From the IMG/VR virus record IMGVR_UViG_3300042359_000853, positions 62,001 through 126,000 of that record: a stretch of DNA of 64,000 nucleotides, one strand, 5' to 3'. The notes beneath the pieces are model-generated. The model did no database searches. It was not told the DNA's origin and saw only the letters and a program-made list of their open reading frames with translations. How positions within the stretch are numbered: position 1 is the stretch's first letter; every line of letters starts with the position of its first letter. Shown here piece by piece: positions 27,621-44,100 of this stretch. Made by a program: the position numbers and the translations under genes.

Positions 27621-30600
27621 TTAAATACCAAAATTTCCATCAAAATATCCATTATACCACATACCACCCTCAAAATTATCACCACGAAATATTCCATTAT
27701 ACCACAGACCACTCTTGAATTGACAGTTTTCAAAATTAGAAACTATACGTAGATCTGTATAAGATCTCCAAGTCGGTGTAAAAGAATAACTACCTGAAAT
27801 TTGTATTAAAGTTTCCCCAGTTTCTAAGACTTCTGAAAATGTTAGAAGATATTTTTTGGGGTTCTCTATTGTTCCGAAAGAAGAATAACCTGATCCGAAC
27901 ATGCTGTAAATCCAAATGTCGTAGGGATATTTGAATCTAAATATACCATTTAGTAGAAACTGCATCTTACCTGATGATTGAGTTAGTCCAATGATTTCAA
28001 TATCATCTACGATACCACCATTAAATATTCCACTTTTGAAGTTCATATTCAAAACTAAACCACCCCAAAAATTTCCAGAAGACCAATCGCCTGACTTGAA
28101 TAAAGACCATCTGTGATTATCACTAACCTGATTATTACCAGAAGAATCTGTTTGTCTTCCAGAGAAAAATTCACCAGAAATCCACTCACCTGTTTCCCAT
28201 ATAGCCTTCGAGTTTCCACTAGCTCTGGTTCCGAATCTAGAAGTCTGAGTATATTCAGAAAATTGACCATCAAACCATCTTCCATTTTCGAAATCACCGC
28301 CTTTGAACTCACCATCTAGCCAATAACAAGGGTTGATATCGGTATTAAACTTACCTGAATTCCAAATACCACTTACCCAGATTCCACCACGAAACTGACC
28401 CCCATTCCAGATACCATCATTCCAAATACCCGAGTTCCAGAAACCTCCGTTCCAGGTGCCTAGATATTTTCTACCACCAAGCCAGGTACCACCATTCCAA
28501 GTGCCATCAAACCATCTACCACTATACCATAGAGATTGTGTATCAACTTGGTTAGAATCTATTAGAACAACACTACCGTTTATTTTTATAGTGTTAGAAT
28601 TCCAATTACCACCATACCAATCTCCAGCAAGCCACTGACCCGAATACCAAGTTCCGTTAAACCATCGACCACATTTCCAAATACCGGAATAAAATACTAA
28701 TCCATTAGAATCTTCACCTACGAGACCGTTGGAAACTTCTGATTCAACTATCCAAGAATATTTTTCTAACATTTTAGATAGTGTGAGACCATCGGTGAAT
28801 CTGAATCTTACCTTATTCATATCTATATTTGTTAATGACGCCGTAGGAGATTCTATCTGATAATTATTTGGTGAGAGTTCAATTAAATCTTTTTGACCTC
28901 TATCCGACCCAACTCTTGATAGATCGACCGGTAATATTTTGAGTAAATCATCACCAAGTGGGTTTATCAGAACATTTGATAGTTTTGATTTCTCATCTTC
29001 ATATATTATTGAGGTTAGATTTGATTTAATATCAGAATCAGAAAGTAATATTCTAGCATAAGAATCAGTTGGGAACTTTTGTGTTACTTCATTTTGGTAA
29101 ATGTCAAAAGTATATGTGGATTGAATCTGTTTTTTATTTAGATTTCTGTTTATGTTATTGAGCTCCTGTAAATCGGAAGAAATTTCCAAGAGAGTGTTTC
29201 TAGAAAGTATATCAATATAGTTTATTGAAGTCGATTGATTATATACTAGAAGATCTCTATTTATTGGCTTGTTGAACTCTATAATATATGAATTTTTCTC
29301 AGGTAAATACTTTTTATTCTCTACTAAACATTTAGTAGTCGAAAAACTACCATAATTGGATGTTTTTACTACTATATCCACAAAACTATTTACCCAAATA
29401 GATTCCCACTCAAACTTTAAGTTTTTCCCAAAAACTAATCTATTTGATAGCTTAGTGTCATCACAAAGTATAATATTTGAAGAAGATGTCCAACTAGAAT
29501 CAAGATCAACATCCAATGCAGGAATATTCTGATATCTGGGCATTGCACCAAAAATCTTACTAGCCGTAAAAGAAATAGGATCTATTCTAGAGAGAAAGTC
29601 GTGAATATTATAAGTTGGTGTGTATCCGAAATTAAAAAAACTCTGCACATAATGGAAACTATAGGTAGAAGAGTTATGAATAATGTTTTGTGCTAAATTA
29701 TAATATGCTGTTTTATTATTTAAGTTACCCGTAATTTGAATTTGACTAGCAGTAATACCAACACGGTAACCAATTGAAAGTGGGTGGAGTGAAAAATTAT
29801 TTATAAATTCCTCAGATGAAGGAAAAACATTCAGATTTGTAACAAAGAAACCAGAATTACGAAGTGAAGAAATAATTTCATTTGAGAAATTATGATAACA
29901 ATACAAGAATATAGGTGTCGGATTACCACTGATATATCTGAATATTTTATTTATCATTAAATTTGCTGAAATTGAATCTGATTTTATGTTCAAAATATCA
30001 CCTTTCTTGAAAAGACTATTATCAAAATCCACATTTACTAATTTAAATACTATAACAAAGTCACCAATCCAACAATTATAACTTGTGGCGAAATTCAAAT
30101 CTATAGGATCAGTTCCTTCTACATAGTATGAATCTCTATCAAACTTGGTGGTTGGAACTAATTTTTTAATATAAATCTGTGATACATCCGGATCAATATT
30201 TTGTTCAGTTAGGCTAGGTGTGGCTGAATCAGCAGTTACAAAAAAAGAATTAGTTGCCGACGAATAATTAAATATAGTTGATATCTCGACAACATTTGAT
30301 TGGCTAAAGGAAGTATAATATTCAAATGTTAAAAGAGTGTTTTTCCAATAATTGACCCAACTTGTTTCCTCTGGTAAGTTCTCGAAAGATACGTCTGAAC
30401 TAGTAAAACCAGAAGTTGAAATCGTTACCGTAATAGGTAGTCTATAATTTCCAAGATAATCATGAAAATTAACTTTTGATGCTAAATCATAATTCAATAT
30501 CAAAAATTTAGAACTGATAGTTTCTGTATATAGCTTCGCAAAATCAGTAACTAATGAAAAACTCGCACTATCATATGATCTACTTATTGAATAATTTGAA

Positions 30601-32360
30601 GCTACCACTAACTCCGAATTATTCCAACTAATAATACGATTAAAATAAGTTGTAGAAACTTCAGCAAATGTAGGACCTCTAAGAACATTTGTATTAGATG
30701 CAGTAATGAAATCATAACCTTTCAGTGAAAAATTATAAAGACTTCTTCCAGCAACATAGATATTCGATCCGATATTTGTAAGTGAATTTGCGCCTATGTT
30801 ATTTACCGAAGATTCTAGAACTAGAAAGGAATAAGTAGAGAAATCATTTTTATTCCAAACAAAAAGATTGTCACTATCAGAAGTAATCAAAAATAGTTCT
30901 TTTTGATCTTTCTTCTGAGATGAAAGTGTCCAACCGCTCACTTCCAAATAAATAAAATCCCTAAGGTGTGGTGTGAGTGTGTATAAGTCTGTTGATGAGT
31001 CCTGGCGAATAATATCTATCTTGGATACTTGCCACCCACTTGGTGACTCAATTAGTGATAAAAAGGTTCCAGAATCTCCTAAAATATAAATTTCAGAAAT
31101 GTTATAGAATAGAACCCGGTTAAGATTAACTTGATTGTTAATACTCTCCAGTTCAAGTTTTGTCCAATCGAGGCCACCATTTCCAGTTATCCAAATTTCA
31201 CCGAACTCCCCAACTAGACAACCATACAGATCAGAGAAAAAAGAAACTGAGGTAAAGTTTTTTACTGAGTCTAATTCTATATAAGTAATCTCAAAGTTGA
31301 CTTTATCAATTTTAAGAAGTGTTGATTCTCTACCACAAACCCAGTAATAGGACTTTGTGTTTTCAATCGATGTTAATTTTGTTGATATTTTGTTATTAAT
31401 CAAACTTGTAGTTCCGGACTGGTAAAGAAGAATTGTCCCAAAATCACCCACAGTCACTACTCTTTCGGGTATTGAATGTGTTCCAATAGTAAGTGAGCCA
31501 TGACGAATAATATCGTTATAATTTACTTCGAAAAGATTATTGTATTCAAATTTATTTTTGATGAGGTATGAGTGTGTTTGTTCGAATTCGGTGTTTTGTG
31601 ATTCTAGTGGATAATATCCATTGGTAAATCTTTTTAGTGAGAAATACTTATCCCTGTTTGTAACACCCGATTTTACATCAATTAAAAGATTTCTAGAAAA
31701 GGTATAACTAGTTACCTGTTGCTTTACTAAAAAACCAGATTCGTATTTGTAAATACCATTTTGTGAATTATAGTAAAACCATTTTTTATTGACTCCCTCA
31801 TCAGAAATAAGATAATAAGTCTCATCGAATGAGTTTGTATCTACGGACGCTGATAATCCTAATTCGGTTTTTTGGTCTTTAATTAAAATTGTCTGACCAT
31901 CTTTTACAAAAATACCATCAATCAATAATGAAGGTTTTTCTAAAAGAAGATTATCAACTTGTGTGGTTGTTGCTAAATCAACTGAAATAGGTTCTATATT
32001 ATCAAAAATAGCCGATTCGGGTGAAAAATATCCTCGATGTGAAAAACCAAGTTCGTAATTGTAGTGTGTATATTGAGTGAAACTATCCGGGTTGATACAT
32101 TCTGAACCGGAACTTGCAGTGAATCCCATAGAATAGGAGCTACTACAAGTTGAAAAGTGCCAAGAACTAGTTTGAGATAAATATTGAAGACTAGGAAATA
32201 AATTATCCAAATCTCTAGAAGTCTGCCAAAGTGCTCCAGAAAAACATTTTGCATAGAGTCTTGTAGCCTCTAAACTTTGGCGAATAGCTTGATAGTTTTC
32301 TATTTCAAGAGTATCTTTACGTAAAGACCAAGAGAGTAAATCTTCGTTATAGTTCCACAT
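27621..32360 (-). CDS. very large predicted virion/tail protein with a BNR/Ycf48-like beta-propeller and Trp-Gly pentapeptide repeats
   Basis: DLATT...IDG...ILIKDQ...NGIY fibre-type motif; VGDFGTI, VGEFGEIWITGNGGLDW; GxWxx repeats near the C-terminus. Confidence 0.7.
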   Translation of the reverse strand: MWNYNEDLLSWSLRKDTLEIENYQAIRQSLEATRLYAKCFSGALWQTSRDLDNLFPSLQYLSQTSSWHFSTCSSSYSMGFTASSGSECINPDSFTQYTHYNYELGFSHRGYFSPESAIFDNIEPISVDLATTTQVDNLLLEKPSLLIDGIFVKDGQTILIKDQKTELGLSASVDTNSFDETYYLISDEGVNKKWFYYNSQNGIYKYESGFLVKQQVTSYTFSRNLLIDVKSGVTNRDKYFSLKRFTNGYYPLESQNTEFEQTHSYLIKNKFEYNNLFEVNYNDIIRHGSLTIGTHSIPERVVTVGDFGTILLYQSGTTSLINNKISTKLTSIENTKSYYWVCGRESTLLKIDKVNFEITYIELDSVKNFTSVSFFSDLYGCLVGEFGEIWITGNGGLDWTKLELESINNQVNLNRVLFYNISEIYILGDSGTFLSLIESPSGWQVSKIDIIRQDSSTDLYTLTPHLRDFIYLEVSGWTLSSQKKDQKELFLITSDSDNLFVWNKNDFSTYSFLVLESSVNNIGANSLTNIGSNIYVAGRSLYNFSLKGYDFITASNTNVLRGPTFAEVSTTYFNRIISWNNSELVVASNYSISRSYDSASFSLVTDFAKLYTETISSKFLILNYDLASKVNFHDYLGNYRLPITVTISTSGFTSSDVSFENLPEETSWVNYWKNTLLTFEYYTSFSQSNVVEISTIFNYSSATNSFFVTADSATPSLTEQNIDPDVSQIYIKKLVPTTKFDRDSYYVEGTDPIDLNFATSYNCWIGDFVIVFKLVNVDFDNSLFKKGDILNIKSDSISANLMINKIFRYISGNPTPIFLYCYHNFSNEIISSLRNSGFFVTNLNVFPSSEEFINNFSLHPLSIGYRVGITASQIQITGNLNNKTAYYNLAQNIIHNSSTYSFHYVQSFFNFGYTPTYNIHDFLSRIDPISFTASKIFGAMPRYQNIPALDVDLDSSWTSSSNIILCDDTKLSNRLVFGKNLKFEWESIWVNSFVDIVVKTSNYGSFSTTKCLVENKKYLPEKNSYIIEFNKPINRDLLVYNQSTSINYIDILSRNTLLEISSDLQELNNINRNLNKKQIQSTYTFDIYQNEVTQKFPTDSYARILLSDSDIKSNLTSIIYEDEKSKLSNVLINPLGDDLLKILPVDLSRVGSDRGQKDLIELSPNNYQIESPTASLTNIDMNKVRFRFTDGLTLSKMLEKYSWIVESEVSNGLVGEDSNGLVFYSGIWKCGRWFNGTWYSGQWLAGDWYGGNWNSNTIKINGSVVLIDSNQVDTQSLWYSGRWFDGTWNGGTWLGGRKYLGTWNGGFWNSGIWNDGIWNGGQFRGGIWVSGIWNSGKFNTDINPCYWLDGEFKGGDFENGRWFDGQFSEYTQTSRFGTRASGNSKAIWETGEWISGEFFSGRQTDSSGNNQVSDNHRWSLFKSGDWSSGNFWGGLVLNMNFKSGIFNGGIVDDIEIIGLTQSSGKMQFLLNGIFRFKYPYDIWIYSMFGSGYSSFGTIENPKKYLLTFSEVLETGETLIQISGSYSFTPTWRSYTDLRIVSNFENCQFKSGLWYNGIFRGDNFEGGMWYNGYFDGNFGI
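28010..28690 (-). repeat. protein-level GxWxx/GxFxx pentapeptide repeat
   Basis: SGIWKCGRWFNGTWYSGQWLAGDWYGGNW...GTWNGGFWNSGIWNDGIWNGGQFRGGIWVSGIWNSG. Confidence 0.85.
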
Positions 32361-32362
32361 TT

Positions 32363-32578
32363 TTATTTTCTTTTAACCCTTAAACTCCAAAGAACATGAT
32401 CTTCTTCTAGATCGACTTTTTCTTTAGCAATAGAAACTTTTGATTTTTTTAAAATATCTTTTATTTCATTTATAAATCTATCGTATTTATAAATGTCCTG
32501 TGTATATTCAGACACTTTAATCTCAAAAGACTCTTCTTCTGAAAAGATGAGTTGGTAGATAAGATCTTCCTTTTTCAA
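32363..32578 (-). CDS. hypothetical protein
   Basis: 71 aa, TTG start, AATATATA 19 nt upstream. Confidence 0.6.
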   Translation of the reverse strand: MKKEDLIYQLIFSEEESFEIKVSEYTQDIYKYDRFINEIKDILKKSKVSIAKEKVDLEEDHVLWSLRVKRK

Positions 32579-32624
32579 GTTAGGTTTTTTTTGTAACTAT
32601 ATATTATTTAAGGTATGTTTGAAC

Positions 32625-33344
32625 TTAAGATCCTTGCTCACTACGAAATTTATCGTATCGGTTGGTAAGTTCAATAAGAAACTTATTTCTCACGATATCT
32701 TCGTTGTTAAATCGGAACTCTACTAGATCTTGCATACCACTGGTCATATCAATAAAATCAAGGTAACCAGAATCTCTTCGCTTTACATCGTATTGAGAAG
32801 TATCTCCCATCATCACGGCTTTTGAGTCTTTACCAAGACGAGTAGCCCAGAGCATTAGAGTTGCTAAGTTAGAGTTTTGACACTCATCTAGTAGCATTAT
32901 ACAATTATCAAAAGTTGTTCCTCTCATATAGGCTAGAGGCTCAAAAATAATCTCTTCGCTTGAAAATAACCCATCTATCATTTTTTGATCTAAGATTTTA
33001 CAAAAGTTAGAGTAGTAAGATTTTACGTAAGGATCGATTTTATCTTTCACATCACCTGGAAGAAGACCAAGTGGATGACCACTTTCAACTGTGGGTTTAG
33101 TGATGATGATTTGTTCTATTTTTTTATCGGCTAAAAGAGATAAAGATGTATAGCAAGTCGAAAAGGTCTTTGATGTTCCAGCAGGACCGTGAACTACCGT
33201 TAGGATATTATTACGAATAGATTTGAATAGTTGTAACTGTTTTGGTGATAGCTCAACGTTGTTTGAGTTTTGAAAAAGTTCTCTTGTGAGTTGACCTTTC
33301 TTTTGTTGTTTGACGGGTTCGGTTACTTTGCTTTGGGTTCTCAA
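32625..33344 (-). CDS. phoH: PhoH-family ATPase
   Basis: GPAGTSKT, LGLLPGD, PLAYMRG.TF, LDECQN, TRLG, GD.SQ.D, DIVRN. Confidence 0.9.
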   Translation of the reverse strand: MRTQSKVTEPVKQQKKGQLTRELFQNSNNVELSPKQLQLFKSIRNNILTVVHGPAGTSKTFSTCYTSLSLLADKKIEQIIITKPTVESGHPLGLLPGDVKDKIDPYVKSYYSNFCKILDQKMIDGLFSSEEIIFEPLAYMRGTTFDNCIMLLDECQNSNLATLMLWATRLGKDSKAVMMGDTSQYDVKRRDSGYLDFIDMTSGMQDLVEFRFNNEDIVRNKFLIELTNRYDKFRSEQGS

Positions 33345-33430
33345 AATTAGGGTTATTTTTTAGATATATATGGATATTAAATCTTTCTAATGTGTAAAAC
33401 AAACGGGAAAAAGAAAATAAAATCAAGATT

Positions 33431-33829
33431 ATGGAAGAAAAAGATTACAATGAGATGTATCACGATATATCCTTTCCGATGGTTAGGAGAGTGTCTGTGA
33501 AAACACTCAGTCAAGAACTGGCGTTCTATTCAGAAGAAGAAATGCAACTTGTGAAGAGTAAAATATTTTCAGAAAATCGAGATAGAAAAATAGATTCACT
33601 TGTGAACGGGTCTGAGTATGTAGAGGCACGTTTAGAAGATGATCCAAAATATAAAGAGCTTGTTTCTAGAGGAGTTAAACCTATGGGCAAACCAAGTGAT
33701 CAACTCTTCTACTTGGATTACAAATATGACAACAACGACACCACAGATTTGAGTAGTATAATATCAACCGCAGAAAAAAACGAGAACATAAATTTCTTAT
33801 CATTTGTAGATATTTTAGATACAAAGTAG
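33431..33829 (+). CDS. small protein resembling a split fragment of the T4-like major capsid protein
   Basis: FPMVRRVSVKTLSQEL, about 50-aa insert, GVKPMGKPSDQLFYLDYKY. Confidence 0.6.
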   Translation: MEEKDYNEMYHDISFPMVRRVSVKTLSQELAFYSEEEMQLVKSKIFSENRDRKIDSLVNGSEYVEARLEDDPKYKELVSRGVKPMGKPSDQLFYLDYKYDNNDTTDLSSIISTAEKNENINFLSFVDILDTK

Positions 33830-33841
33830 ATGAAAGTTACG

Positions 33842-33849
33842 TATCTTTG
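33842..33849 (+). promoter_or_regulatory. Bacteroidota sigma-A -7 element
   Basis: TATCTTTG followed by an A-tract and ATG 33862. Confidence 0.65.
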
Positions 33850-33861
33850 TAAAAAAAACTT

Positions 33862-34032
33862 ATGAAATACTTATTCTTGTTCCTCTTCTTTATTTCTAGT
33901 TTTATGCTTGGTGCCTACACAACTAGTCAGTTTAAGTTCGATACTCCTGTTGAATCTTACAGATGGGCTTTGACCTCTTTTTGGGGTATTTTTTTCTTGG
34001 TGACATTTCTTAAATATAATCAAAAAAAATAA
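33862..34032 (+). CDS. 56-aa small membrane protein with two hydrophobic segments; absent from the ORF track
   Basis: Own translation MKYLFLFLFFISSFMLGAYTTSQFKFDTPVESYRWALTSFWGIFFLVTFLKYNQKK; stop 1 nt before the next ATG. Confidence 0.75.
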   Translation: MKYLFLFLFFISSFMLGAYTTSQFKFDTPVESYRWALTSFWGIFFLVTFLKYNQKK

Positions 34033-34033
34033 C

Positions 34034-34381
34034 ATGAAAACTGGATATTTACTCTGGCTCGATGACATGAGAAATCCCTTTCTAGCAGATTGGGTTCTAC
34101 AATACGCACCTGATTTCGATGATCGTAAAGAGCAGATTGTTTGGTGTAAGAATTTCCATGATTTCTCGGATTGTATTACTCAAAGAGGTCTTCCCGAAGA
34201 GATTTGCTTTGATCACGATCTCGGTGAAGATTTGACTGGATACGACTGCGCAAAGTGGCTTGTAGATTATCTTTTAAATACTGGTGAAGATTTACCACCT
34301 TTTTCTATACAAAGCCAAAACCCAGTCGGTAGGGAAAATATTATTGGATTATTAAGATCTTTTACTCGATCGAGGGGTTAA
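34034..34381 (+). CDS. cyclic-phosphate-processing receiver-like domain protein
   Basis: LWLDDMRNP, FDHDLG, TGYDCAKWL, S.NPVG.ENI. Confidence 0.8.
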   Translation: MKTGYLLWLDDMRNPFLADWVLQYAPDFDDRKEQIVWCKNFHDFSDCITQRGLPEEICFDHDLGEDLTGYDCAKWLVDYLLNTGEDLPPFSIQSQNPVGRENIIGLLRSFTRSRG

Positions 34382-34405
34382 ATATTTTACTAAATACAGA
34401 AATAG

Positions 34406-34951
34406 ATGATATTTTTTGATAGGTTAAATTGGATATTTTATACAAGTTGGGAAGCGTCTTCCCTGGTTGTTGAACTCAAAGATTTACTTCCTAATACTCG
34501 TTTTTTTGATGCTGCTAACTGGACTAAAATTGATAGCGATCAGGGTAAACTATTCTTTGATTATAGAGATGATTTCACTAGAATAATAAGAGCAATAGAA
34601 GGTTCTAAAGATCGTCCAAGTTATACTTTTATTCTAATAAACCGAATAGATCCAGATTTTTTACCAAAACTGGATTTTTTATTCAAAAGAGATGTGTATG
34701 GAAAAGTAAAATGGGTATTTACCCTTAATACAAGAAGGACTTCACTAAAAGATAACTCTCTAAAAACTGAATACGATTGCTTGAAAATCTTACCACGTTT
34801 AGTAAGTGAAGTTGGAATAAAGTCGGGCAAAAAATTCTTTCATTTAGGACGAGATGATGAAAGTTTTCTTCTGTCAGAAGGTCAAGAAAATATTTATATC
34901 AGGGATCTACAGGCACATGTTAGAGATTACAAGATCTCCTTATTAGAATGA
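34406..34951 (+). CDS. hypothetical protein
   Basis: 181-aa ORF ending RDYKISLLE. Confidence 0.6.
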   Translation: MIFFDRLNWIFYTSWEASSLVVELKDLLPNTRFFDAANWTKIDSDQGKLFFDYRDDFTRIIRAIEGSKDRPSYTFILINRIDPDFLPKLDFLFKRDVYGKVKWVFTLNTRRTSLKDNSLKTEYDCLKILPRLVSEVGIKSGKKFFHLGRDDESFLLSEGQENIYIRDLQAHVRDYKISLLE

Positions 34952-35278
34952 GTTAATGAGATCTCGTAGAACGGCAGCCTTTTCGTAGTTTTCTACATCA
35001 ACTTCTTTTTCTAAGATCAAGTTGAAAATTTTGATCTTCTCACCCTGTGGCATCTTCTCAACAAGTGGAGAATCAATATCAAATATTCTTGTAAGAGCAA
35101 AAATAGGAAATACCTTGCTGATCCAGTTTTCTTGAATAAGATTTTTACCATCAACCGTTGTAGTTGACCAAGAACAGGTCATCTGAAAAGATTTTACAAT
35201 CTTCTCAAACTCTTCAACGGTTGTGATTCTTTTTCCGGTCTCCATTTGGGATAAGAGAGTTTTTAGGCGATCAATCAT
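34943..35278 (-). CDS. protein with a C-terminal UVR (UvrB/UvrC) motif
   Basis: LEKEVDVENYEKAAVLRDLI. Confidence 0.7.
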   Translation of the reverse strand: MIDRLKTLLSQMETGKRITTVEEFEKIVKSFQMTCSWSTTTVDGKNLIQENWISKVFPIFALTRIFDIDSPLVEKMPQGEKIKIFNLILEKEVDVENYEKAAVLRDLINSF

Positions 35279-35315
35279 TTTAGTTATATATTATTTTTAA
35301 AATATAGTTTATCAA

Positions 35316-36026
35316 CTATTGTGCCAAACTTTCATTCGTGACAATTTTTCTTCTCAGGACTTTTAGACAAAAAATTGAATCTACAATATCTTCTATTGGG
35401 TTGGGTATCTTCTCTCTATCCATTAGGTCTTTGTGATGAAAAAGAATGTTGTAAATTGGGGCATCTATTTTGCCATCAATAAACGCCTTAAACATTTGTT
35501 GCTTCTTAAAACTACCACCGGCTATGCCTTGATCATTGACCCATTTCAATTTTTTCTTTTTAACACCTAGTTCAATCGGTGGATAGACAAGTTTACAGGA
35601 TTCGAGCTTAAGAGAGAGTGGTGAAATAATAGACATCTCTATGTCCGGTATTCTGGTGAGTAGTTCTGTTTTTACTAAAGTAGAAAGAGATACAATATCC
35701 AAGATTGAACTAGTGTTTCTAGAAAAAGAGTAACCCTCTATACTACAGAAAGTTTTCATAGTAGGATCGAGATACCTAGTCACCGTATCAACAATATTGT
35801 GTGAAAGTTCACTGAAGTCAAGAAGTTTAAGTATTTCATTACTAGAGTAATCTGATGAAGATTTCCGATACAGATGTGTAAAAATAACACCGGATGATTT
35901 TAACTCATTGATCCAAATGTTGTTATCTTTCTTTGAGGTAAAACTAAGAACTATTTTTTTATCCGATGTTTCAATATAAACCGCAGTGCTATTTAAGCTA
36001 ATATCTATTCCTATAAAATTATACAT
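35316..36026 (-). CDS. RuvC-like Holliday junction resolvase
   Basis: RNase H-fold acidic residues: IGIDISLNSTA, IEGYSF, K..M, DIVDS. Confidence 0.75.
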   Translation of the reverse strand: MYNFIGIDISLNSTAVYIETSDKKIVLSFTSKKDNNIWINELKSSGVIFTHLYRKSSSDYSSNEILKLLDFSELSHNIVDTVTRYLDPTMKTFCSIEGYSFSRNTSSILDIVSLSTLVKTELLTRIPDIEMSIISPLSLKLESCKLVYPPIELGVKKKKLKWVNDQGIAGGSFKKQQMFKAFIDGKIDAPIYNILFHHKDLMDREKIPNPIEDIVDSIFCLKVLRRKIVTNESLAQ

Positions 36027-36048: not shown

Positions 36049-38166
36049 TTAGCCTCTGAAAAATCTTCTACTTCTAGTTCTTGGTTGGATTGGTACTTTT
36101 AATCCCATTGGCTTTGAACCGTAAGTGCTTGCGAACTGTTTATTTCCACCTGAGTAAGTGTCGGACGAAGGTTGGTTAGGTGGTAGTGTTGTTATTGGAA
36201 CTACTTGTGTGGTGGTTGAAGTGGTTGTGGTCACTTCGGGTGATGGAGTTGGTGTAGGTGTGGGTGTAGGTGTTGTTGTGGAAGTTGGTGTGGGTGTGTT
36301 TGTTGGTGTTGGCGTAGAAGTAGAATCTGGTGTCTGAGTAACTGTTGCCGATGGTGTCACTGAAGGAGTTATCGTAGAAGTTGGTGTAGAGCTAGGTGTT
36401 GAGCTTGGTGATGGTTCGTATTGGGGGAGTTGGCCAACCGAATATAGTATAGATCTACCAAGCATTTTACACAAAGTGGATGTATTACTAGTAATCGAAC
36501 CAAACCAAGTATTGATACCAATTAGTTTTGAGCAACCAACTTCCTTTATCGCAAGTAACTTTACTCCACTCGGGGTGTAGGATGCGTGAAGAACCGCACC
36601 GCTGGAAAGAGTTGGATCACCGTTTGTGAAAGGTGTTCCACCAAAAGTTGAATTTAACCCATCTGCAATAGATATAGAAGTAGAAAATGTGAAATTACCT
36701 CCTATTGTTGATTGTGTGTTTGTGGCTAGAAATGGTGTGAGTGATGAGTGTGTAAATCCCGAAGGATAAAGATTCCATAAAAATACTCCAGATATAATAT
36801 GACCACCAGAATTCACAAATTCAAGTAGTGAATTGCCAAGACCAGACGCACCTACTTGACTACCATTGGTGTAAATGAACACAACATCATAACCTGAACT
36901 TGTTAAACCACTTCCGCTATATGTTGTGGACATACTCACAGTAGAGTATGTTATCGAAAATCCTTCTGTGTTAATATAAGAATTAATGTTTGATGCAACA
37001 GTATCTACGTTTGCGTCACCTAAGAATAAAACATTGATGGTACCAGACACAGTTCCACAAATCTCACTGGTGTTCGTAGAAGAAGGTGTTATTGTGGGTG
37101 TAGGTGTATTTGTAGGTGTTTCGGTATTTGTTGGTGTGTTTGTTGGTGTCTGAGTAGGTGTTTCACTCGGTGAGACATCTGGTGTTTCGGTATTTGTTGG
37201 TGTGTTTGTTGGTGTTTCAGTATTTGTAGGTGTATTTGTGGATGTTGGTGTTGGTGTTTCGGTATTTGTGGGTGTATTTGTAGGTGTCTCTGTATTTGTA
37301 GGTGTTGGAGTTTCAGTAGGTGTTTCAGTAGGTGTTTCAGTATTTGTCGGTGTAGGGGTTTCAGTAGGTGTTTCAGTATTTGTAGGTGTGTTTGTGGATG
37401 TTGGTGTTTCAGTATTTGTGGGTGTATTTGTGGGTGTCTCTGTATTTGTAGGTGTATTTGTGGATGTTGGTGTTGGTGTTTCGGTATTTGTAGGTGTATT
37501 TGTAGGTGTCTCTGTATTTGTAGGTGTTGGAGTTTCAGTAGGTGTTTCAGTAGGTGTTTCAGTATTTGTCGGTGTAGGTGTTTCAGTAGGTGTTTCAGTA
37601 TTTGTTGGTGTATTTGTAGGTGTCTCTGTATTTGTAGGTGTTGGTGTTGGTGTGGATAATTCGATATTACCCAAACTAATATAAACTGGGACTCCAAATG
37701 AAAAATCTGAAGAACTGGTTTGGACAATAGTAGCTAGTCCGGATGGTGAGTTTGACGGGGGAACTCCTATATTGCTACCGAAAACAAAACCAGTCCCACT
37801 AGCCGTAAAACTCCACGATTTGAATGATTGTGTGTCACCTGAGTAAATGGCAGTATTACTATATTGTGTGAAACTTATAGTCACACCTTGATTCAAAAAA
37901 CTTTGGAAATACGAACTTCTATCCACACCATCTGCGTCAATACTATTAAAATAAAATCCTCTCCCTGTTAAACCCAGTTCGTTGATTTTAGTGATACCCA
38001 TTGTGGCACCACCTGAACCGTTCATTATAGCATTGCCTGAAGAAGGAAATGTATATGGAAGATCTAGTAATATAAATGGATATCCAGAGTTTGTGACTGG
38101 ACTTGGAGTGGGTGTAGATGTTTCTGTTGGGGTTATGGTGGGTGTTTCTGTGGGTGTCTCGGTCAT
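36049..38166 (-). CDS. mucin-like Thr/Pro-rich protein with two globular domains (the second GATase/flavodoxin-like)
   Basis: Three T/P tracts; VLFLGD...YDVVFIY...[11 protein letters not shown]. Confidence 0.7.
37085..37660 (-). repeat. coding Thr/Pro tandem repeat (TPTNTETP units)
   Basis: Same unit family as 16320-17610, with an internal higher-order duplication. Confidence 0.95.
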
Positions 38167-38516: not shown

Positions 38517-40220
38517 ATGATTATAGAAGAAATTTCAATACGTGGATATAAATCATTTGGAAATACAGAACAAGTTGTAAAGTTTAATACTGAAGCAGGA
38601 GAACTTATTCTTCTTTGTGGATCGAACGGTTCTGGTAAAAGTTCAATACTTGAGTGTGTAGAATACTCACTTTATGGAAAAGTGAAATCCATGAAAAATA
38701 AAAAATGGACTAAATCATCCCTATTACCAAATAGAATAAACGGTGAGCTTTTGAACAAAATAAAATTTAAATCTTCTGGATCTGAAATCGAAGTTATTCG
38801 TGGGATATCTCCGAATGTTTTGAGAGTTCTTGAAAATGGTCTTGAAATCGATAAAGCTGGTAAAGCTTCACTGGATGAAAGAATAGAAAAACTAGTTGGT
38901 ATTGATATTGAAACTTTCAAGAGTTTTATTTCACTATCTATCAACGATTTTAAGAATTTTATTTCACTCTCGTCTGAGGAAAAGAAACTTCTTTTAGATA
39001 AACTTTTTAACCTTGAAGTAATCAATATTCTATCTGATATCTTGAAGGATCTTAATAAGACCAATAAAATAGGACTCGCTAGATTAGATGCTGAAATAGG
39101 ATCCCTTGCTAGCTCTATACGTTCAATTGATATGTCTATTCAAAAAGCGCTCGAAAGAGAAAAAGAAGATCTTGATCAAGAGATCTCAGTTCTCAATGCT
39201 GAAATAGAAAAAAGAAAAGAAGAGTATAAGTTATTGAAGGAAAAAAAGGATAAAATAGCACTTAAAGAAACTGAGATAAACACACACCTTGATAAAGAGA
39301 AAGAGGAACTCTATAAAATCAGAAATAATTTAAATAATGTCGATCGAGAAATATCACTTTACAACTCAGGAAAGTGTCCCACTTGTAAAGTTTCTTTCGA
39401 TGGTCAATTCTTTGCTGATTTAAGAAATGAACTAGATCAGAAAAAACAAGGTATCCAAAAAATATTAGAGCAGATTACACAAAATATAACTTCTTTGGGA
39501 GAAAAGAAAAAGAAACTTGGAGAATTGACCGTTGATGTAACTACAAACTTCAACGATTTAACTTATTTACTTCGTAACTACAAATCACAAATCGATCAAC
39601 TCACACAGAAAAAAAACTCAGGTTCTACTCAAAGTCATACTACACAAGAGTTTGAGAATACCAAATCAGAACTTCTTTCTAAGATGGATGTTGTATCTGG
39701 TGAAAACGTAATTTTACAAGAAAAAGAAGTTTATTACAAAGAACTTTCTAAAATATTGAGTGAAGATGGTGTTAAAAAAAGTATTATTTCTAAAATCATC
39801 GAACCTATCAATCATTTTGTAGCTGAAAATTTACGTAAAATGAGAATACCATTTCAAGTAGTGTTAGATCAAAACTTCAACGCTGAGATTAAAAACCTAA
39901 ATGAAGTAATTGAACAAGATAGTCTATCGACTGGTGAAAATAAAAGAATCAACATTTGTATTATGATAGCTTATCTGAAAATGATACGAACTAAAAGACA
40001 TATCAATATTCTTTTTCTTGATGAAGTTTTCTCATCGATAGATCTCGAAGGTATTGAGTCTATTTTATTATTACTTAAAGATTTTGCTAACAACTATAAG
40101 ATAAGTATATTTGTAGTTCATCACGCCCTGATGAGTGGTGAGTTTTTTGATAGAATTATCAGTGTGAATAAAGATGTTTTTTCACAAATAACCGAAACTT
40201 CTACCCAGGAGATCCAATAA
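38517..40220 (+). CDS. gp46/SbcC/Rad50-like recombination ATPase
   Basis: YKSFGN, GSNGSGKS, coiled coil with CPTC zinc hook, LSTGE signature, LFLDE, H-loop. Confidence 0.9.
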   Translation: MIIEEISIRGYKSFGNTEQVVKFNTEAGELILLCGSNGSGKSSILECVEYSLYGKVKSMKNKKWTKSSLLPNRINGELLNKIKFKSSGSEIEVIRGISPNVLRVLENGLEIDKAGKASLDERIEKLVGIDIETFKSFISLSINDFKNFISLSSEEKKLLLDKLFNLEVINILSDILKDLNKTNKIGLARLDAEIGSLASSIRSIDMSIQKALEREKEDLDQEISVLNAEIEKRKEEYKLLKEKKDKIALKETEINTHLDKEKEELYKIRNNLNNVDREISLYNSGKCPTCKVSFDGQFFADLRNELDQKKQGIQKILEQITQNITSLGEKKKKLGELTVDVTTNFNDLTYLLRNYKSQIDQLTQKKNSGSTQSHTTQEFENTKSELLSKMDVVSGENVILQEKEVYYKELSKILSEDGVKKSIISKIIEPINHFVAENLRKMRIPFQVVLDQNFNAEIKNLNEVIEQDSLSTGENKRINICIMIAYLKMIRTKRHINILFLDEVFSSIDLEGIESILLLLKDFANNYKISIFVVHHALMSGEFFDRIISVNKDVFSQITETSTQEIQ

Positions 40221-40234: not shown

Positions 40235-40426
40235 ATGATTAAAGTAGAACTAGGTAAAGACCCAATAGATAAAGCTCTGAAAATATTCAAGAGAAAATTT
40301 GATAGAGTGGGAGTTATTAAAGAACTCAGAAATAGAAAAGAGTTCAAGAAAAAATCAGTTGTTCGTAGAGAAGAGATCAGAAAAGCTATCTATGTTGAGA
40401 AAAACTTCTTATCACCAAAAGATTAA
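40235..40426 (+). CDS. rpsU: ribosomal protein bS21 (phage-encoded)
   Basis: IDKALK.FKRK....GVIKELR.R.EF.K.SV.RR.E..KAIY. Confidence 0.92.
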   Translation: MIKVELGKDPIDKALKIFKRKFDRVGVIKELRNRKEFKKKSVVRREEIRKAIYVEKNFLSPKD

Positions 40427-40442
40427 TTCGCATAAATAGAGT

Positions 40443-41168
40443 ATGGATTTAGAAAAAAACTATTACCAGATACTTGGTGTGGATAAAGATGCTACGTCTG
40501 ACGAAATTAAAAAAAAATATTATAAACTATCTAAAAAACTACACCCAGATGTTGGTGGAGATAGTAATCTATTCTCACAGATAAACGAAGCCTACGAAAT
40601 TTTCAGTAACGAAAAGCTAAGAAAAGATTGGGATAAAAGAAGTCGTTTTGGTAAAAACTATAAACTTGTAAATGAGTTTAAAAACTATGAACAAACTATA
40701 TTATCAAAAACTTGGGAGAAGGGTAAGTTCGATAAGATCAAATCTGAAACAGATCTACATATACATCTAGAAGTTGAAAAAAATTTTGGAGGTGTTGTAG
40801 AATATCAAAGATGGGTTACTTGTAAATCTTGTAAAGGAACCGGTCTAGATCTCAGAGGAAAAATAGTTATCAAGGATGAAAATGGTAATATACTAAGACA
40901 ATTTGAAAACGAAGATGGTTGTGATTTCTGTGAAGGAACTGGTAAGGATTGGAGAGATGAGGTATGTAGTTTTTGTGAAGGCAAAGGAAAAACTGGATCA
41001 ATCATTTGTGGTGACTGTCAAGGTAAAAGAAGAATCCTAGGTAATCAAAAGTTAGAAAAAATAAAGTTCCCAAAAGGTGAAAAGTTTCTAAAAATTGAAT
41101 CGATGGGTAATATATCTGTTACTTCTCAAGGTAAATCAGGACATCTTTTTCTAATAAAGAAAAGTTAA
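40443..41168 (+). CDS. dnaJ: truncated DnaJ-like co-chaperone (J domain and zinc finger)
   Basis: YYQILGV, HPD motif, four CxxCxGxG-type repeats; no G/F region or full C-terminal domain. Confidence 0.85.
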   Translation: MDLEKNYYQILGVDKDATSDEIKKKYYKLSKKLHPDVGGDSNLFSQINEAYEIFSNEKLRKDWDKRSRFGKNYKLVNEFKNYEQTILSKTWEKGKFDKIKSETDLHIHLEVEKNFGGVVEYQRWVTCKSCKGTGLDLRGKIVIKDENGNILRQFENEDGCDFCEGTGKDWRDEVCSFCEGKGKTGSIICGDCQGKRRILGNQKLEKIKFPKGEKFLKIESMGNISVTSQGKSGHLFLIKKS

Positions 41169-41170
41169 TT

Positions 41171-44100
41171 CTATCTGTAAATCTGAACATTTCCTATGAA
41201 ATCAAAATCTAGACGACTATAATCAATTCTTGGGGCAATAGCTTTAGTAGGTGATTTCATAAACCTATCAATTCTATCAGTTCCTGATGAGTCCAAATAG
41301 TAATTAAAAAACGGAATTCTATCAACTTCATAGAAATTTATTCGAGAAAAATAGATTTGAGAAGAGGGTGAAGACCAACCCGAATCGAAATCCGATCCAC
41401 CCAATATAGAAAAGTCAAGTTTTTCTAAATTGAAGAAGTATTCCCTTTTAACACTCGAAGTATAAGACAGATGATCAACTGGTGTAGATAAAAGATTGGG
41501 TAGATTATCTATAGGCTTATTATTCAGATATATTCTGGGATATTTGTTTGAAGAAGTTCCGAAGTTCATAAAATCCACAACACTTGAACCTGAGTGTGTA
41601 TAAACCTCAAACTCTACAAGAGAATATCTTTCTCTAGATATAGTTGAATTTTTATTTGAAAAGTTCCAAGAAGAAAAACCAGAACCAGAAGCGGACGCCG
41701 ACGTTTCTACAAGTAATAAGTTAGAGAAATCAGGATCCGTGATGTTATAGTTAGATGTAAATGTAGCTGATTGAAGATTGAAAATATTATTCATGGAATA
41801 TGAATATGTCCAGCCCCTTGAGAAAAACTCTAATAAATTAGAGGTGTTTGATAATTGTGGCACCCCATTTTTAATATTTGTTACATAATTAAATTGTCCA
41901 GATTGAGATATTTTAGAAACTACGGGTGAGAATTTTTTTCCTAGACTATAGCTTGATACACTAGTATTTGAAATATTCCTAATATTTGCTGAGATTCTTA
42001 AAATATTATCGGTCGTATAAGAAGTGTGGTTTAAGTATTTAATAGATTTATCGAAAAATTCCGAAAAATAGTTTAGGTTATCGTAGGTATTTGTTCTTTG
42101 AGACTGATTCCATGAAAGATTAATCCATGAGTTATATCTTCTGTTTCTAGCACCAATCATACGCAAAGGCGTTTTGTATAGAGAAGAATAGTTAGGATCG
42201 ATTTTATCGGGTTGTACAAGATATGATCCATCAGAAAACTTCAAACTCTGAATGAGACATTTATCTTGACCAGAATCTGAAATCTGACCACCTTCAAAAA
42301 CACCATCTACAAGATGTGTAGATTCCATAAGTAAATTCTCGGGATATCCATTGATTAGTCCATAGATCATAATTCCCGAAAAATATCCATTTAGGAATGC
42401 TCCACTTAGCCAAACATTTTTGGATACTTTTATCGGATGATCTTGTGAATCTTTTACTATACTACGAAGTGGTGTGTTCGACACAAATTCAACCCTTATG
42501 AATTCTGAACTTTTTTCCAAGATAGTTGCTGAAGATTTAATAAGAGTGAATTCTTGATTAACGTCAATTCCCGCAATATTAGAAATACTCACCTTTTCAC
42601 CTACAGTAAAGTTTTTGCTATTTTCACCTTCTATTCTTAACGTGTATGTGAATTGACTTGTTTGTATAAAGTTTGAACAGCTACTAAAAGTCCACGAATG
42701 TTCATCTCCTCTCCAACCATTATTCCATACTCCATTCTCCCAAATACCTTTTTCAAAAACACCATTACCAAAATTCATTCTCACAACTGAACCATTATCA
42801 GAGGGTGTGTTATAACTTGTGTTTGGTAAATCAGAAAATGCCAGTGTTGGTGCAGTAGATGTAGAAGAATTCGTAAGTTTATTATTATAGACTTGGTTAT
42901 AGTTTGATATAATTTTATGAATTGAGATATTCGTGATTTCAACCCCAGCAAAGAAACCCGGATTGAAATTGTAAGCTTGAATAATTAAATCTTTATCGTC
43001 AGAAATTTTTGGAGAATAATCAAAAATATAATCTGTTAGTGTATTATTCAAATGTATTAAAGGTGTTCCAATACTATAATCGGTAGCTATTGGTGTTGTT
43101 GATAATGGTGAGAAAGCAGGAAAATTCCCTGACCAATATCCAGGTTCACCACTACTTGGTAGTATTTCTGATTGAGTGAAAGAACCAATCTTAGCAAATA
43201 AATAAACATTAGTTGGATCGGTAGGGTTTGTAACACTTCTATAGCATCTAGCTGTTATTGTTATACGGTAGGTGAAACTTGTATCTCTAAAAACATTTCT
43301 AGATATTTGACAAGAAGTGTCATTACATTCCCATACTTGTGGGATAAGATGCTCTGAAAATTGTAGAGGTAAGAATGTTCCGGTTGGTATAAGAGCTGAA
43401 GATGATAAAGTCCAATCAGTTAAAGATGCGTTGGACGTTTGTGTATAGTATTCCGTGGAAGATGGATTAAATCCAAAATTCACTATTTCGGTTGAATTCA
43501 CAGAAAAAGATCCAACGTTCATATAGTGAACCTTATCCCACATACTGGATGTAGAAGATATAAAACTATTCACTCTTTTAAGATAGATGGAAGTTTTTTC
43601 TTCTAGAGCAGGTGACGGACTTGTGAATGGTGTTCCGTTCCAGTTACCGTTTCTCCATCTACCACCTTTCCACAAGATATTGTTAGCGAATCCATATTCC
43701 CAAACACCCGTGTGCCATATTCCCGCTGTCATTGTTCCAGATTGGAACACACCATCTTGCCACTCTGAGATATAGAAGTGACTATCAATGAAATTACCTC
43801 CTTTCCAAATACAACTTTGTGTTAAATTGAAAGATAAAGCGGAAGTTTCATTCTCTACCAGGCCTACGCGATTCACCCATGGGTTAAAGCTAGAGTTTCT
43901 GAAGTTACCTTTAACAAATCTACCTTGTAGCCACAAAGAATTGAAAATAACACCCACATCATGACTGAATGTTCCATCGACCCATAGCATATTTTGAAAA
44001 TTTGCTCTTGATAGGTTTCTAACCTCTGAAGAAATATTTAATGGTGTAAAGATATCTCTATCGGTAGTTCCCATGTTAGAATTATCGATAACTAATCCGT

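What the first reader, a model, noticed from the sequence alone, without database searches (positions are those of the whole stretch)
33431..33829. Mini-protein carrying a split copy of the major-capsid Gol peptide: possible decoy or EF-Tu binder
Seen: FPMVRRVSVKTLSQEL and GVKPMGKPSDQLFYLDYKY separated by about 50 aa. Known: the most conserved stretch of T4 gp23 is the Gol region (AVMGMVRRAIPNLIAFDICGVQPMNSPTG), which binds EF-Tu and triggers the Lit protease; capsid proteins trigger several defence systems. The ORF is only 132 aa, lacks the late motif and lies next to a host-promoter operon. Inference: a capsid-epitope mimic that titrates capsid-sensing immunity, binds EF-Tu or regulates head assembly.
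Basis: partly seen in the sequence, partly recalled or inferred. Interest (0 to 1): 0.8.

Follow-up and report, generated by a model that had tools for sequence, protein, structure and literature searches.

The report
Capsid-protein N-terminus copied as mini-protein
A giant lake-water phage carries a small, conserved gene that is a copy of the front end of its T4-type major capsid protein with an extra helix inserted; it probably docks onto capsid-assembly partners, but nothing shows that it is an immune decoy.

Summary
The ORF belongs to a family of small proteins (255 clusters at 50% identity, mostly 80-185 aa). The family profile aligns to the N-terminal arm of the gp23-type major capsid protein (MCP) of Mahaphage-type huge phages (hhalign 97.9%, E 3e-13), with a constant insertion of about 49 aa between the two motifs. 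Full-length members also copy the MCP propeptide helices; the window's lineage has lost them. Against T4 gp23 alone, only motif 2 is significant (gp23 113-131), and motif 1 is at chance level. The gene is single-copy and syntenic next to PhoH. It is under purifying selection (dN/dS 0.14-0.35) but evolves far faster than PhoH or the MCP. The inserted helix is its most constrained part among close relatives and is confidently predicted; the MCP-like motifs are predicted disordered on their own. Best reading (inferred, about 0.4): an MCP N-arm mimic that docks onto prohead partners and displays the helix. Nothing here tests the decoy or EF-Tu idea, and three points weigh against the decoy: the mimic segments drift while the MCP epitope stays fixed, the non-MCP helix is the most constrained part among close relatives, and a free Gol peptide activates Lit rather than blocking it. 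The family is undescribed, of moderate interest.

The parts
33431..33829 (+). Complete ORF, 132 aa plus stop: mini-protein derived from the MCP N-terminus
   Evidence: ORF list. Family of 255 clusters. A5 profile E 4.9e-34, single copy in the 95 kb record. dN/dS 0.14-0.35.
33473..33520 (+). Motif 1 (residues 15-30, FPMVRRVSVKTLSQEL): homolog of the MCP N-arm helix (clade MCP LLPVAMKIAAQTIGLDL; T4 gp23 about 96-112, the first half of Gol)
   Evidence: hhalign register, explicit alignment, P16 invariant. Not significant against T4 alone. Low pLDDT, no regular structure in the window model.
33530..33670 (+). Inserted module (residues 34-80): long helix 35-59 with the invariant N49-R50 core (NRDxKIDS), then EYxE..LEDDxEY. 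It has no counterpart in the MCP.
   Evidence: 49-column gap in hhalign. Motif-to-motif spacing 71-83 aa in the family. pLDDT 94-97. Lowest dN/dS, 0.15. The same module occurs in P0163 (hhalign 96.7%, E 4.7e-10). phrog_20793 E 8.5e-5.
33671..33727 (+). Motif 2 (residues 81-99, GVKPMGKPSDQLFYLDYKY): homolog of the MCP strand VKPSPGPKIDLLYIDFQY, equal to T4 gp23 113-131 (second half of Gol and beyond)
   Evidence: BLASTP E 0.003 against T4 gp23 and 5e-4 against the W01 MCP. Pfam Gp23 positions 23-51. D96 invariant; Y94 and Y99 nearly invariant.
33728..33826 (+). Lineage-specific acidic C-terminal tail (residues 100-132)
   Evidence: Present only in the closest relatives. Across 104 family members, tails are basic in 16, acidic in 13 and under 6 residues in 38.
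33356..33388 (.). Nearly invariant 33-nt block in the PhoH/mini divergent intergenic region (TTTTTTAGATATATATGGATATTAAATCTTTCT): probable shared promoter or regulatory element
   Evidence: Alignment of six relatives. Unique in the window. Contains ATATATAT and TATTAAAT, both enriched upstream of genes.

Best explanation
Origin and anatomy (shown, about 0.95). The ORF is a functional member of an undescribed family of small proteins found in a subclade of Mahaphage-type huge phages. The family arose by duplication of the 5' end of the gp23-type major capsid protein gene. Full-length members (about 150-180 aa) keep the two propeptide helices (KWxPxLxxMGxTG, DWMxxYAExH), the N-arm helix (LLPIAMKVAAxTIG) and the first two beta-strands (LVxVxP, GxLFYLDYxY), which together are the region homologous to T4 Gol. 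A conserved charged helical module of about 49 aa (ENRDxKIDSI..EYxE..LEDxxEY) sits in the turn between the two strands. The window's lineage has lost the propeptide and keeps N-arm, module and strand. Mechanism (inferred, about 0.4). The MCP-like segments do not fold on their own. They act as docking elements that bind whatever the real MCP N-terminus binds in the prohead: the scaffolding core, the portal rim, or the neighbouring capsomer's sheet by strand addition. This places the inserted helix, which carries the family-specific activity, in or on the assembling shell. The protein would then be a minor prohead or capsid accessory, or a modulator or cap of MCP polymerisation, for example in assembly or size control of the very large capsid.
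For: Homology: hhalign family vs clade MCP 97.9%, E 3.3e-13. BLASTP of the W01 mini-protein vs the W01 MCP gives 1e-14, including the propeptide. The family profile hits the MCP N-termini of six genomes. Explicit alignment with T4 gp23. Pfam Gp23 is the only recurrent family (11 of 81 members), and the atlas neighbours are small Gp23-labelled viral proteins. Functional gene: dN/dS 0.14-0.35; 255 clusters; synteny PhoH|mini in all relatives; single copy; a 265-nt contig with one mismatch in a metatranscriptome library (not proof of transcription). Docking idea: AF2 gives the inserted helix pLDDT above 94, but the MCP-like motifs only 50-70, with no regular fold in the window model, and Foldseek finds no globular match. 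In T4, gp23 residues 66-105 are disordered in the unexpanded head, face the scaffolding core, carry the capsid-length mutations A94V and G97S, and later make inter-capsomer contacts (PMC9546572); Met98 in that arm contacts the portal whisker (PMC7136217). The same helical module is fused to an MCP C-terminal half in P0163. In W01 and W02 the gene ends a tight cluster headed by the late-type TATATATA motif. N-terminal propeptides target proteins into T4 and giant-phage proheads (PMC5694885).
Against: There is no direct evidence of capsid association: no virion proteome, no cultured member and no complex prediction. The gene lies far from the head module (88 kb from the MCP in W01), among PhoH, cREC_REC, RuvC-like and SbcC-like genes. 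In the window it lacks the late-type motif at the usual distance. The window's lineage has lost the propeptide, the part most expected to bind the scaffold. The family is absent from the 735 kb and 462 kb phages, Lak-B5 and PAU, which have related MCPs, so it is not needed for assembly of this capsid type in general. Fast amino-acid change (dN about 20 times that of PhoH for WIN-L012) also fits conflict genes. The putative L/I-x-E protease site in the helix has Glu in only 48% of members.
Confidence: 0.42

Rival explanations
1. Anti-defence decoy. The mini-protein displays the MCP's conserved N-arm epitope and binds a host sensor that recognises newly made capsid protein, without activating it, so the sensor is titrated.
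For: MCPs are common triggers of defence systems (Lit/Gol, CapRel, CBASS, Thoeris; PMC9712102, PMC13728456). The gene evolves fast relative to its neighbour and to the MCP. The closest pair, L015-L016, shows about 10 nonsynonymous changes to 1 synonymous, clustered around motif 1. Distribution is limited to a subclade. The gene lies outside the head module and has no late-type motif at the usual distance. N- and C-termini are variable.
Against: The mimic segments drift while the MCP epitope is invariant, and they do not track the own MCP. Among close relatives the inserted non-MCP helix is the most constrained part. A free Gol peptide activates Lit rather than blocking it (PMC9712102). No capsid-mimic decoy is on record in the review read. 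The gene is single-copy and stably syntenic rather than sitting in a variable accessory island.
Confidence: 0.15
2. Exapted module unrelated to capsids. The MCP-derived flanks are an evolutionary leftover that only frames the helix. The NRDxKIDS helix does something in DNA metabolism or host takeover, in keeping with its neighbours.
For: The neighbourhood is PhoH, cREC_REC, RuvC-like and SbcC-like genes, conserved from the window's lineage to W01. The helix is the most constrained part among close relatives, with invariant N-R. NRDxKID-like motifs recur in other small ORFs (L029). 16 of 104 members have polybasic tails that could bind nucleic acid.
Against: Family-wide, motif 2 is the best conserved segment, and P16, D96, Y94 and Y99 in the MCP-like parts are invariant or nearly so. 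This would not be expected of a mere leftover. The motif-to-motif spacing is fixed.
Confidence: 0.25
3. EF-Tu binder. Like the T4 Gol peptide, the motifs bind host EF-Tu and modulate translation or couple it to head assembly.
For: Motif 2 is homologous to gp23 113-131, which overlaps the Gol peptide. T4 Gol is reported to act on EF-Tu through Lit (PMC9712102; PMC3014915 appeared in the search but I did not read it).
Against: The Gol-equivalent is split by about 50 residues, and motif 1 is not T4-like beyond chance. The conservation of this MCP region is explained by its structural role in the HK97 fold. No evidence links EF-Tu binding to any MCP outside T4.
Confidence: 0.05
4. Decaying pseudogene fragment, or an exon of a split MCP gene.
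For: It is a partial copy of a longer gene. In W01 and W02 a T5orf172/MUG113 gene lies just downstream.
Against: dN/dS is well below 1 in all three segments. There are hundreds of intact homologs with a conserved stop position. W01 and W02 each have a complete MCP with its own N-terminus. No MCP remainder lies downstream; instead there is a conserved promoter-like box and a membrane ORF.
Confidence: 0.02

Closest known systems
[quoted passage not shown]
   Same: Homologous. The KWxPxL helix, the N-arm helix and the strand GVQPMNSPTGQVFALRAVY align with the family. As in T4's unexpanded head, these segments are predicted not to be ordered without partners (PMC9546572).
   Different: It is a free-standing 98-185 aa protein without the rest of the HK97 fold. 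It carries a helix of about 49 aa inserted in the turn between the two strands. The window's form lacks the propeptide. Its nearest source is the Mahaphage-type MCP, not T4.
HK97 gp5 delta-domain and free scaffolding proteins
   Same: The concept that an MCP N-terminal, largely helical segment mediates assembly and can exist either fused or free (PMC9546572).
   Different: No sequence relation was tested or claimed. These phages already have an acidic scaffold-like gene just upstream of the MCP.
T4 capsid-targeting sequences and giant-phage long propeptides (IPs, Alt, SPN3US gp47 and others)
   Same: N-terminal peptides that take proteins into the prohead core (PMC5694885). Full-length members carry the MCP's own propeptide.
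   Different: In W01 and W02 only the MCP and the mini-protein share this propeptide, so it is not a general tag. A cleavage motif is not conserved. There is no homology to T4 gp22, gp67, gp68 or gp24.
Partial duplicates of head-related genes (T4 alt.-1/alt.-2; truncated 'cryptic' prohead protease paralog of SPN3US-like phages)
   Same: The front part, or a truncated copy, of a head-related gene kept as a separate small ORF (annotation; PMC5694885).
   Different: Those are lineage-restricted and of unknown use. This family is large (255 clusters), under purifying selection, and has gained a new module.
Half-MCP family (P0163, W01 250-aa ORF; phrog_28442)
   Same: P0163 carries the same helical module (96.7%, E 4.7e-10) and is also derived from the MCP.
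   Different: It keeps the MCP C-terminal half (residues 365-515) rather than the N-arm. It is 250-323 aa long, and on two contigs it lies next to a ClpP-family gene.

Membership tests
Pfam PF07068 Gp23 (T4-type major capsid protein) | Score at or above the curated gathering cut-off (24.4 bits) | tested here: not met
   14.1 bits, E 0.031. 11 of 81 family members reach E<=0.01, all sub-threshold.
Pfam PF07068 Gp23 (T4-type major capsid protein) | Complete HK97-type fold (E-loop, P domain, A domain) of about 500 aa | tested here: not met
   132 aa. The alignment to the MCP covers only residues 86-138. The AF2 model is non-globular and Foldseek gives no hit for the full-length relative's model.
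Pfam PF07068 Gp23 (T4-type major capsid protein) | Homology to the N-arm / Gol region | tested here: met
   hhalign 97.9%, E 3.3e-13. The profile hits six MCP N-termini.
Gol peptide (trigger of the Lit protease) | Contiguous peptide equivalent to gp23 93-122 | tested here: not met
   It is split by 50 residues. Motif 2 equals gp23 113-131 (E 0.003), but motif 1 is at chance level against T4.
Gol peptide (trigger of the Lit protease) | Binds EF-Tu and activates Lit cleavage of EF-Tu | not testable with these tools
   Needs biochemistry or complex prediction.
Prohead core / capsid-targeted proteins (T4 gp22, gp67, gp68, IPs) | Sequence homology to a known core protein | tested here: not met
   hhalign probability below 1% for T4 gp22, gp67, gp68 and gp24.
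Prohead core / capsid-targeted proteins (T4 gp22, gp67, gp68, IPs) | Conserved prohead-protease site (L/I-x-E) | tested here: inconclusive
   An I-x-E pattern follows the NRDxKIDS core, but Glu is present in only 72 of 149 members and is Asn in the window ORF.
Prohead core / capsid-targeted proteins (T4 gp22, gp67, gp68, IPs) | Physical presence in proheads or virions | not testable with these tools
   No cultured member and no proteome.
Phage anti-defence decoy or sponge | Binds and neutralises an immune sensor | not testable with these tools
   The host and its defence systems are unknown.
Phage anti-defence decoy or sponge | The mimic tracks the mimicked epitope | tested here: not met
   The MCP segment is identical in W01 and W02, while the mini-proteins differ from it and from each other, with equal identity to own and foreign MCP.
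This mini-protein family (A1/A5 profile) | Motif 1, NRDxKIDS helix and motif 2 at fixed spacing | tested here: met
   E 4.9e-34 to the A5 profile. Spacing in 48 family members that carry both motifs by pattern is 71-83; the window ORF's own motif 1 did not match that pattern, and by position its spacing is 78 (FP at residue 15, LFYLDY at 93). Invariant P16, N49, R50 and D96.

The most novel reading that the evidence does not exclude
The family is a capsid-mimic counter-defence. A free copy of the MCP N-arm, made independently of the head genes, occupies host sensors (or EF-Tu) that would otherwise detect nascent capsid protein, and the inserted helix prevents activation. This would be the first phage-encoded decoy for capsid-sensing immunity. 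A second, equally unexcluded novel reading is that this mini-protein, the half-MCP family and the 67-70 aa helix fragment are non-covalent pieces that together build a specialised MCP-like subunit.
Probability: 0.15. Interest if true: 0.85.

Novelty: new variant of a known kind. Interest (0 to 1): 0.5.

Why it matters
Nothing is known experimentally about how phages with genomes above 600 kb build their capsids. A conserved, abundant family that reuses the MCP's own propeptide, N-arm and first strands, the very segment that in T4 contacts the scaffold and portal and sets head length, is a concrete candidate for an assembly or size-control factor. It is also an example of a structural protein's docking arm being copied into a separate gene and given a new module. 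If it instead proved to be an immune decoy, it would open a new class of counter-defence against the many systems now known to sense capsid proteins. Either way the family deserves a name and an experiment. At present its members are labelled hypothetical or, by automatic annotation, 'Gp23 domain-containing', which could lead to small ORFs being miscalled as capsid genes.

Tried and rejected
- PDB sequence searches found no gp23. The family profile gave only a weak repeated-motif match to the phycobilisome linker CpcN (E 0.004, each stretch insignificant), which I judge to be chance. The W01 MCP itself found nothing.
- Foldseek of the P0089 model against the PDB gave 0 hits.
- hhalign against T4 gp24, gp67, gp68 and gp22 showed no relation. 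The resemblance of gp68's basic tail to some family tails is compositional only.
- The 508-aa weak Gp23 hit in W02 (L008) is not MCP-like.
- The idea of a conserved L/I-x-E protease site in the helix is only half supported.
- A sigma-70 consensus scan found no promoter-like site upstream of the ORF.
- I tried to test universality in 617-634 kb metagenome contigs, but those records are not searchable, so I used six deposited genomes instead.
I left those rows out and used database members.
- Own-MCP tracking or gene conversion was not seen.
- The ClpP gene next to P0163 cannot be called a prohead protease, because its match to cellular ClpP is too strong (E 3e-70).
- The record's own MCP could not be compared, because the 95 kb fragment does not contain it.

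Full report
WHAT IS THERE. FPMVRRVSVKTLSQEL is residues 15-30 and GVKPMGKPSDQLFYLDYKY is residues 81-99. The window is part of a 95 kb viral record with an estimated completeness of 17%, and that record contains no major capsid protein (MCP) gene. Identical sequence recurs in at least 12 lake-water metagenome runs from 2020 to 2024.

IS THE RESEMBLANCE REAL?
- On the single sequence the evidence is thin. Pfam Gp23 gives E 0.031, below the cut-off.
- BLASTP against T4 gp23 aligns only motif 2 to gp23 113-131 (E 0.003; 0 of 2000 shuffles reach the score). Motif 1 against T4 is at chance level.
- The ORF has a large family: 22 close homologs and 255 clusters at 50% identity in an exhaustive profile search. 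Nearly all are 80-185 aa, and none of the 150 listed has MCP length (the longest are 323 and 236 aa).
- Remote members lie in the complete 642 kb and 635 kb phage genomes LR756502.1 (W01) and LR745206.1 (W02). These genomes also encode a true gp23-type MCP of 571 and 560 aa.
- The W01 mini-protein matches the N-terminus of the W01 MCP at BLASTP E 1e-14.
- A profile of 154 family members aligns to a profile of 122 clade MCPs at 97.9% probability, E 3.3e-13. Both motifs fall on one contiguous MCP stretch (86-138), with a 49-column gap between them.
- Conversely, the family profile finds the N-termini of the true MCPs of six huge-phage genomes (E 4e-9 to 3e-5).
- Gp23 is the only Pfam family that recurs over members (11 of 81). 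The protein atlas places the ORF among small viral proteins that carry Gp23 labels (a lead only).
The split copy is therefore genuine homology, shown through the clade's own MCP rather than through T4.

ANATOMY. An explicit alignment of T4 gp23, the W01 and W02 MCP N-termini and the mini-proteins shows that full-length members (about 150-180 aa) copy the whole front of the MCP:
- two propeptide helices (KWxPxLxxMGxTG; DWMxxYAExH);
- a variable linker;
- the N-arm helix (LLPIAMKVAAxTIG);
- a strand (LVxVxP);
- a second strand (GxLFYLDYxY).
A conserved charged module (ENRDxKIDSI..EYxE..LEDxxEY) sits between the two strands. The spacing from motif to motif is 71-83 residues in the family members that carry both motifs, against about 26 in the MCP. 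The LVxVxP strand lies before the module in W01-type members and after it in the window's type. The window's lineage has no propeptide; P0022 (160 aa, 43% identical) still has one. Tails vary among 104 members: 16 are polybasic, 13 acidic and 38 almost absent. The window's acidic tail is lineage-specific.

AlphaFold2, run with the family alignment, predicts the module as a long helix with pLDDT 94-97 (window residues 35-59). Motifs 1 and 2 get low confidence (pLDDT 50-70) and no regular fold in the window model. In the full-length member P0089 the propeptide is predicted as a helical hairpin. Overall pTM is 0.37-0.39, and Foldseek finds no PDB match. The protein is not globular on its own.

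The module also occurs in P0163 (323 aa). There it is followed by a region homologous to MCP residues 365-515 (hhalign 96.7%, E 4.7e-10, and 93.2%, E 3e-7). P0163 and a 250-aa W01 ORF form a 'half-MCP' family.

IS IT A LIVE GENE? Yes.
- Pairwise dN/dS among six relatives is 0.14-0.35. By segment it is 0.15 for the module, 0.28 for the N-terminus with motif 1, and 0.42 for motif 2.
- Family-wide, P16, N49, R50 and D96 are invariant, and I54, Y94 and Y99 nearly so.
- The gene is single-copy in the record and in W01 and W02.
- The arrangement PhoH(-) | mini(+) | [56-aa membrane ORF] | cREC_REC | 181-aa ORF is conserved. An SbcC-like gene lies a few kb downstream both here and in W01.
- It evolves quickly. 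For WIN-L012, dN is 0.217 against 0.010 for PhoH. The W01 and W02 mini-proteins are 56% identical, whereas the MCP N-termini are 80% identical and the Gol-equivalent MCP segment is identical.
- The closest pair (L015 and L016) differs by about 10 nonsynonymous changes and 1 synonymous change around motif 1. The numbers are too small for a test.
- A metatranscriptome library holds a 265-nt contig inside the ORF with one mismatch. This is consistent with transcription but does not prove it.

DISTRIBUTION. The MCP relatives are the Mahaphage genomes (735, 642, 636, 635 and 462 kb), the Lak megaphages, and more distantly PAU and the Tenacibaculum jumbo phages. The largest of these are predicted to infect Bacteroidetes (PMC7162821). 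Clear mini-proteins occur in W01 and W02, and a 72-aa short form in the 636 kb genome. None was found in the 735 kb and 462 kb genomes, Lak-B5 or PAU. The family is therefore specific to a subclade.

EXPRESSION SIGNALS.
- TATATATA is about 28-fold enriched upstream of genes in the window (11 of 53 crude gene calls, 14-48 nt before start codons, mostly of large proteins). It is probably a late-type promoter.
- The mini-protein has only GATATATATGG at -67, inside a nearly invariant 33-nt block shared with the divergent PhoH gene. The spacing of that element suits PhoH better.
- Right after the stop codon lies a conserved TAtcTTTG, which resembles the Bacteroidota -7 box (my own knowledge). It sits ahead of a conserved 56-aa membrane ORF.
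- In W01 and W02 the gene ends a tight five-gene cluster. In W01 the first gene of that cluster has TATATATA 36 nt upstream; W02 has the motif at the same relative position.
Timing therefore remains open.

HOW IT MOST LIKELY WORKS. In T4, gp23 residues 66-105 are disordered in the unexpanded head and point inward towards the scaffolding core. They carry the length-changing mutations A94V and G97S, and after expansion they form inter-capsomer contacts (PMC9546572). Met98 in this arm contacts the portal whisker (PMC7136217). A free protein built from this arm, with or without the propeptide, whose MCP-like parts are ordered only on a partner, is best explained as docking onto the partners of the MCP N-terminus and presenting the inserted helix there. 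That would make it a minor prohead or capsid accessory, or a modulator of MCP polymerisation. This step is inference (about 0.4). Arguments against it are the genomic location, the loss of the propeptide here, and the family's absence from related huge phages.

Nothing here tests the decoy idea. Fast evolution and the location of the gene are compatible with it. Against it:
- the mimic segments do not track the invariant MCP epitope;
- among close relatives the non-MCP helix is the most constrained part;
- the Gol peptide alone activates Lit (PMC9712102);
- the recent counter-defence review that I read lists no capsid-mimic decoy.
EF-Tu binding is untestable here and is made less likely by the split and by motif 1 being unlike T4. 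The pseudogene and split-gene readings are refuted.

NOVELTY. I found no description of this family in the literature searched. Partial duplicates of head genes are known: T4 alt.-1/alt.-2 and a truncated prohead-protease paralog (PMC5694885). I therefore rate it a new variant of a known kind, of moderate interest, rising to high interest if the decoy reading or a composite-subunit reading proved true.

Noticed in passing
window 33862-34032 (+), with 33842-33849: A 56-aa predicted membrane ORF is conserved codon-wise in all relatives, although gene callers did not call it there. It is preceded by a conserved TAtcTTTG box, which resembles the Bacteroidota -7 promoter element.
   Followed up: partly
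window, 9 sites, e.g. upstream of 16385-20359(-), 20415-23603(-), 38517-40220(+), 57831-60659(-): The palindromic TATATATA is about 28-fold enriched 14-48 nt upstream of start codons, mostly of large ORFs. It is probably this phage's late-type promoter. The same motif heads the gene cluster containing the mini-protein in W01 and W02.
   Followed up: partly
window 40235-40426 (+) and 40443-41168 (+): The phage encodes ribosomal protein S21 (Pfam E 1e-11) followed by a DnaJ-domain protein (E 1e-19). Both are conserved in relatives (L016, L017).
   Followed up: partly
window 34034-34381 (+): A cREC_REC (cyclic-phosphate processing receiver) domain protein (Pfam E 1e-21) lies downstream of the mini-protein. 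It is missing in relative L018.
   Followed up: no
window 36049-38166 (-): A 705-aa protein with long Thr/Pro-rich tandem repeats ([12 protein letters not shown]...). The repeats create long spurious ORFs in other frames and on the other strand. It has no family match.
   Followed up: no
window 27621-32360 (-) and 41171-45658 (-): Two very large ORFs (1579 and 1495 aa) have no Pfam match, and the first has no PHROG match either. The first has a C-terminal region rich in GxWxxG repeats and is conserved in relatives.
   Followed up: no
L009:1462-1674 and L010:1453-1656 (W01 / W02): Orthologous 67-70 aa ORFs resemble the MCP helix GMDIVQKMESILVNELSQTISKQIV and end in a basic tail (Pfam Gp23 E 1e-3; hhalign E 1e-3 to 2e-3). 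They are possibly a second MCP-fragment mini-protein.
   Followed up: partly
L007:1426-2178 (-) in W01; P0163 in L044:1607-2578 and L045:890-1861: A 'half-MCP' family (250-323 aa). P0163 carries the NRDxKID helix module followed by the MCP C-terminal half, and lies directly after a ClpP-family protease gene on two contigs. The W01 250-aa ORF matches the module only weakly (hhalign E 0.016).
   Followed up: partly
L029 (W02:127832-130936), minus strand: Two other small ORFs contain NRDxKID-like helices (HHRESKIDSILTNSEYKEF; SEIRDQKIDDIFDE), so the module's core motif recurs in these genomes.
   Followed up: no
L015:1754-2113 vs L016:6724-7083: The closest pair of mini-protein genes differs by about 10 nonsynonymous changes and 1 synonymous change, clustered in residues 6-23. 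Their PhoH genes show the opposite pattern (dN/dS 0.07). This may reflect local diversifying selection or a recombination patch.
   Followed up: partly
L002:6490-6945 and L003:6581-6910: A T5orf172/MUG113 (GIY-YIG-like) gene lies just downstream of the mini-protein in both W01 and W02.
   Followed up: no
window 32300-35400: At least 12 lake-water metagenome runs from 2020-2024 hold all sampled words of this stretch, so this is a persistent and widespread lake phage population.
   Followed up: partly
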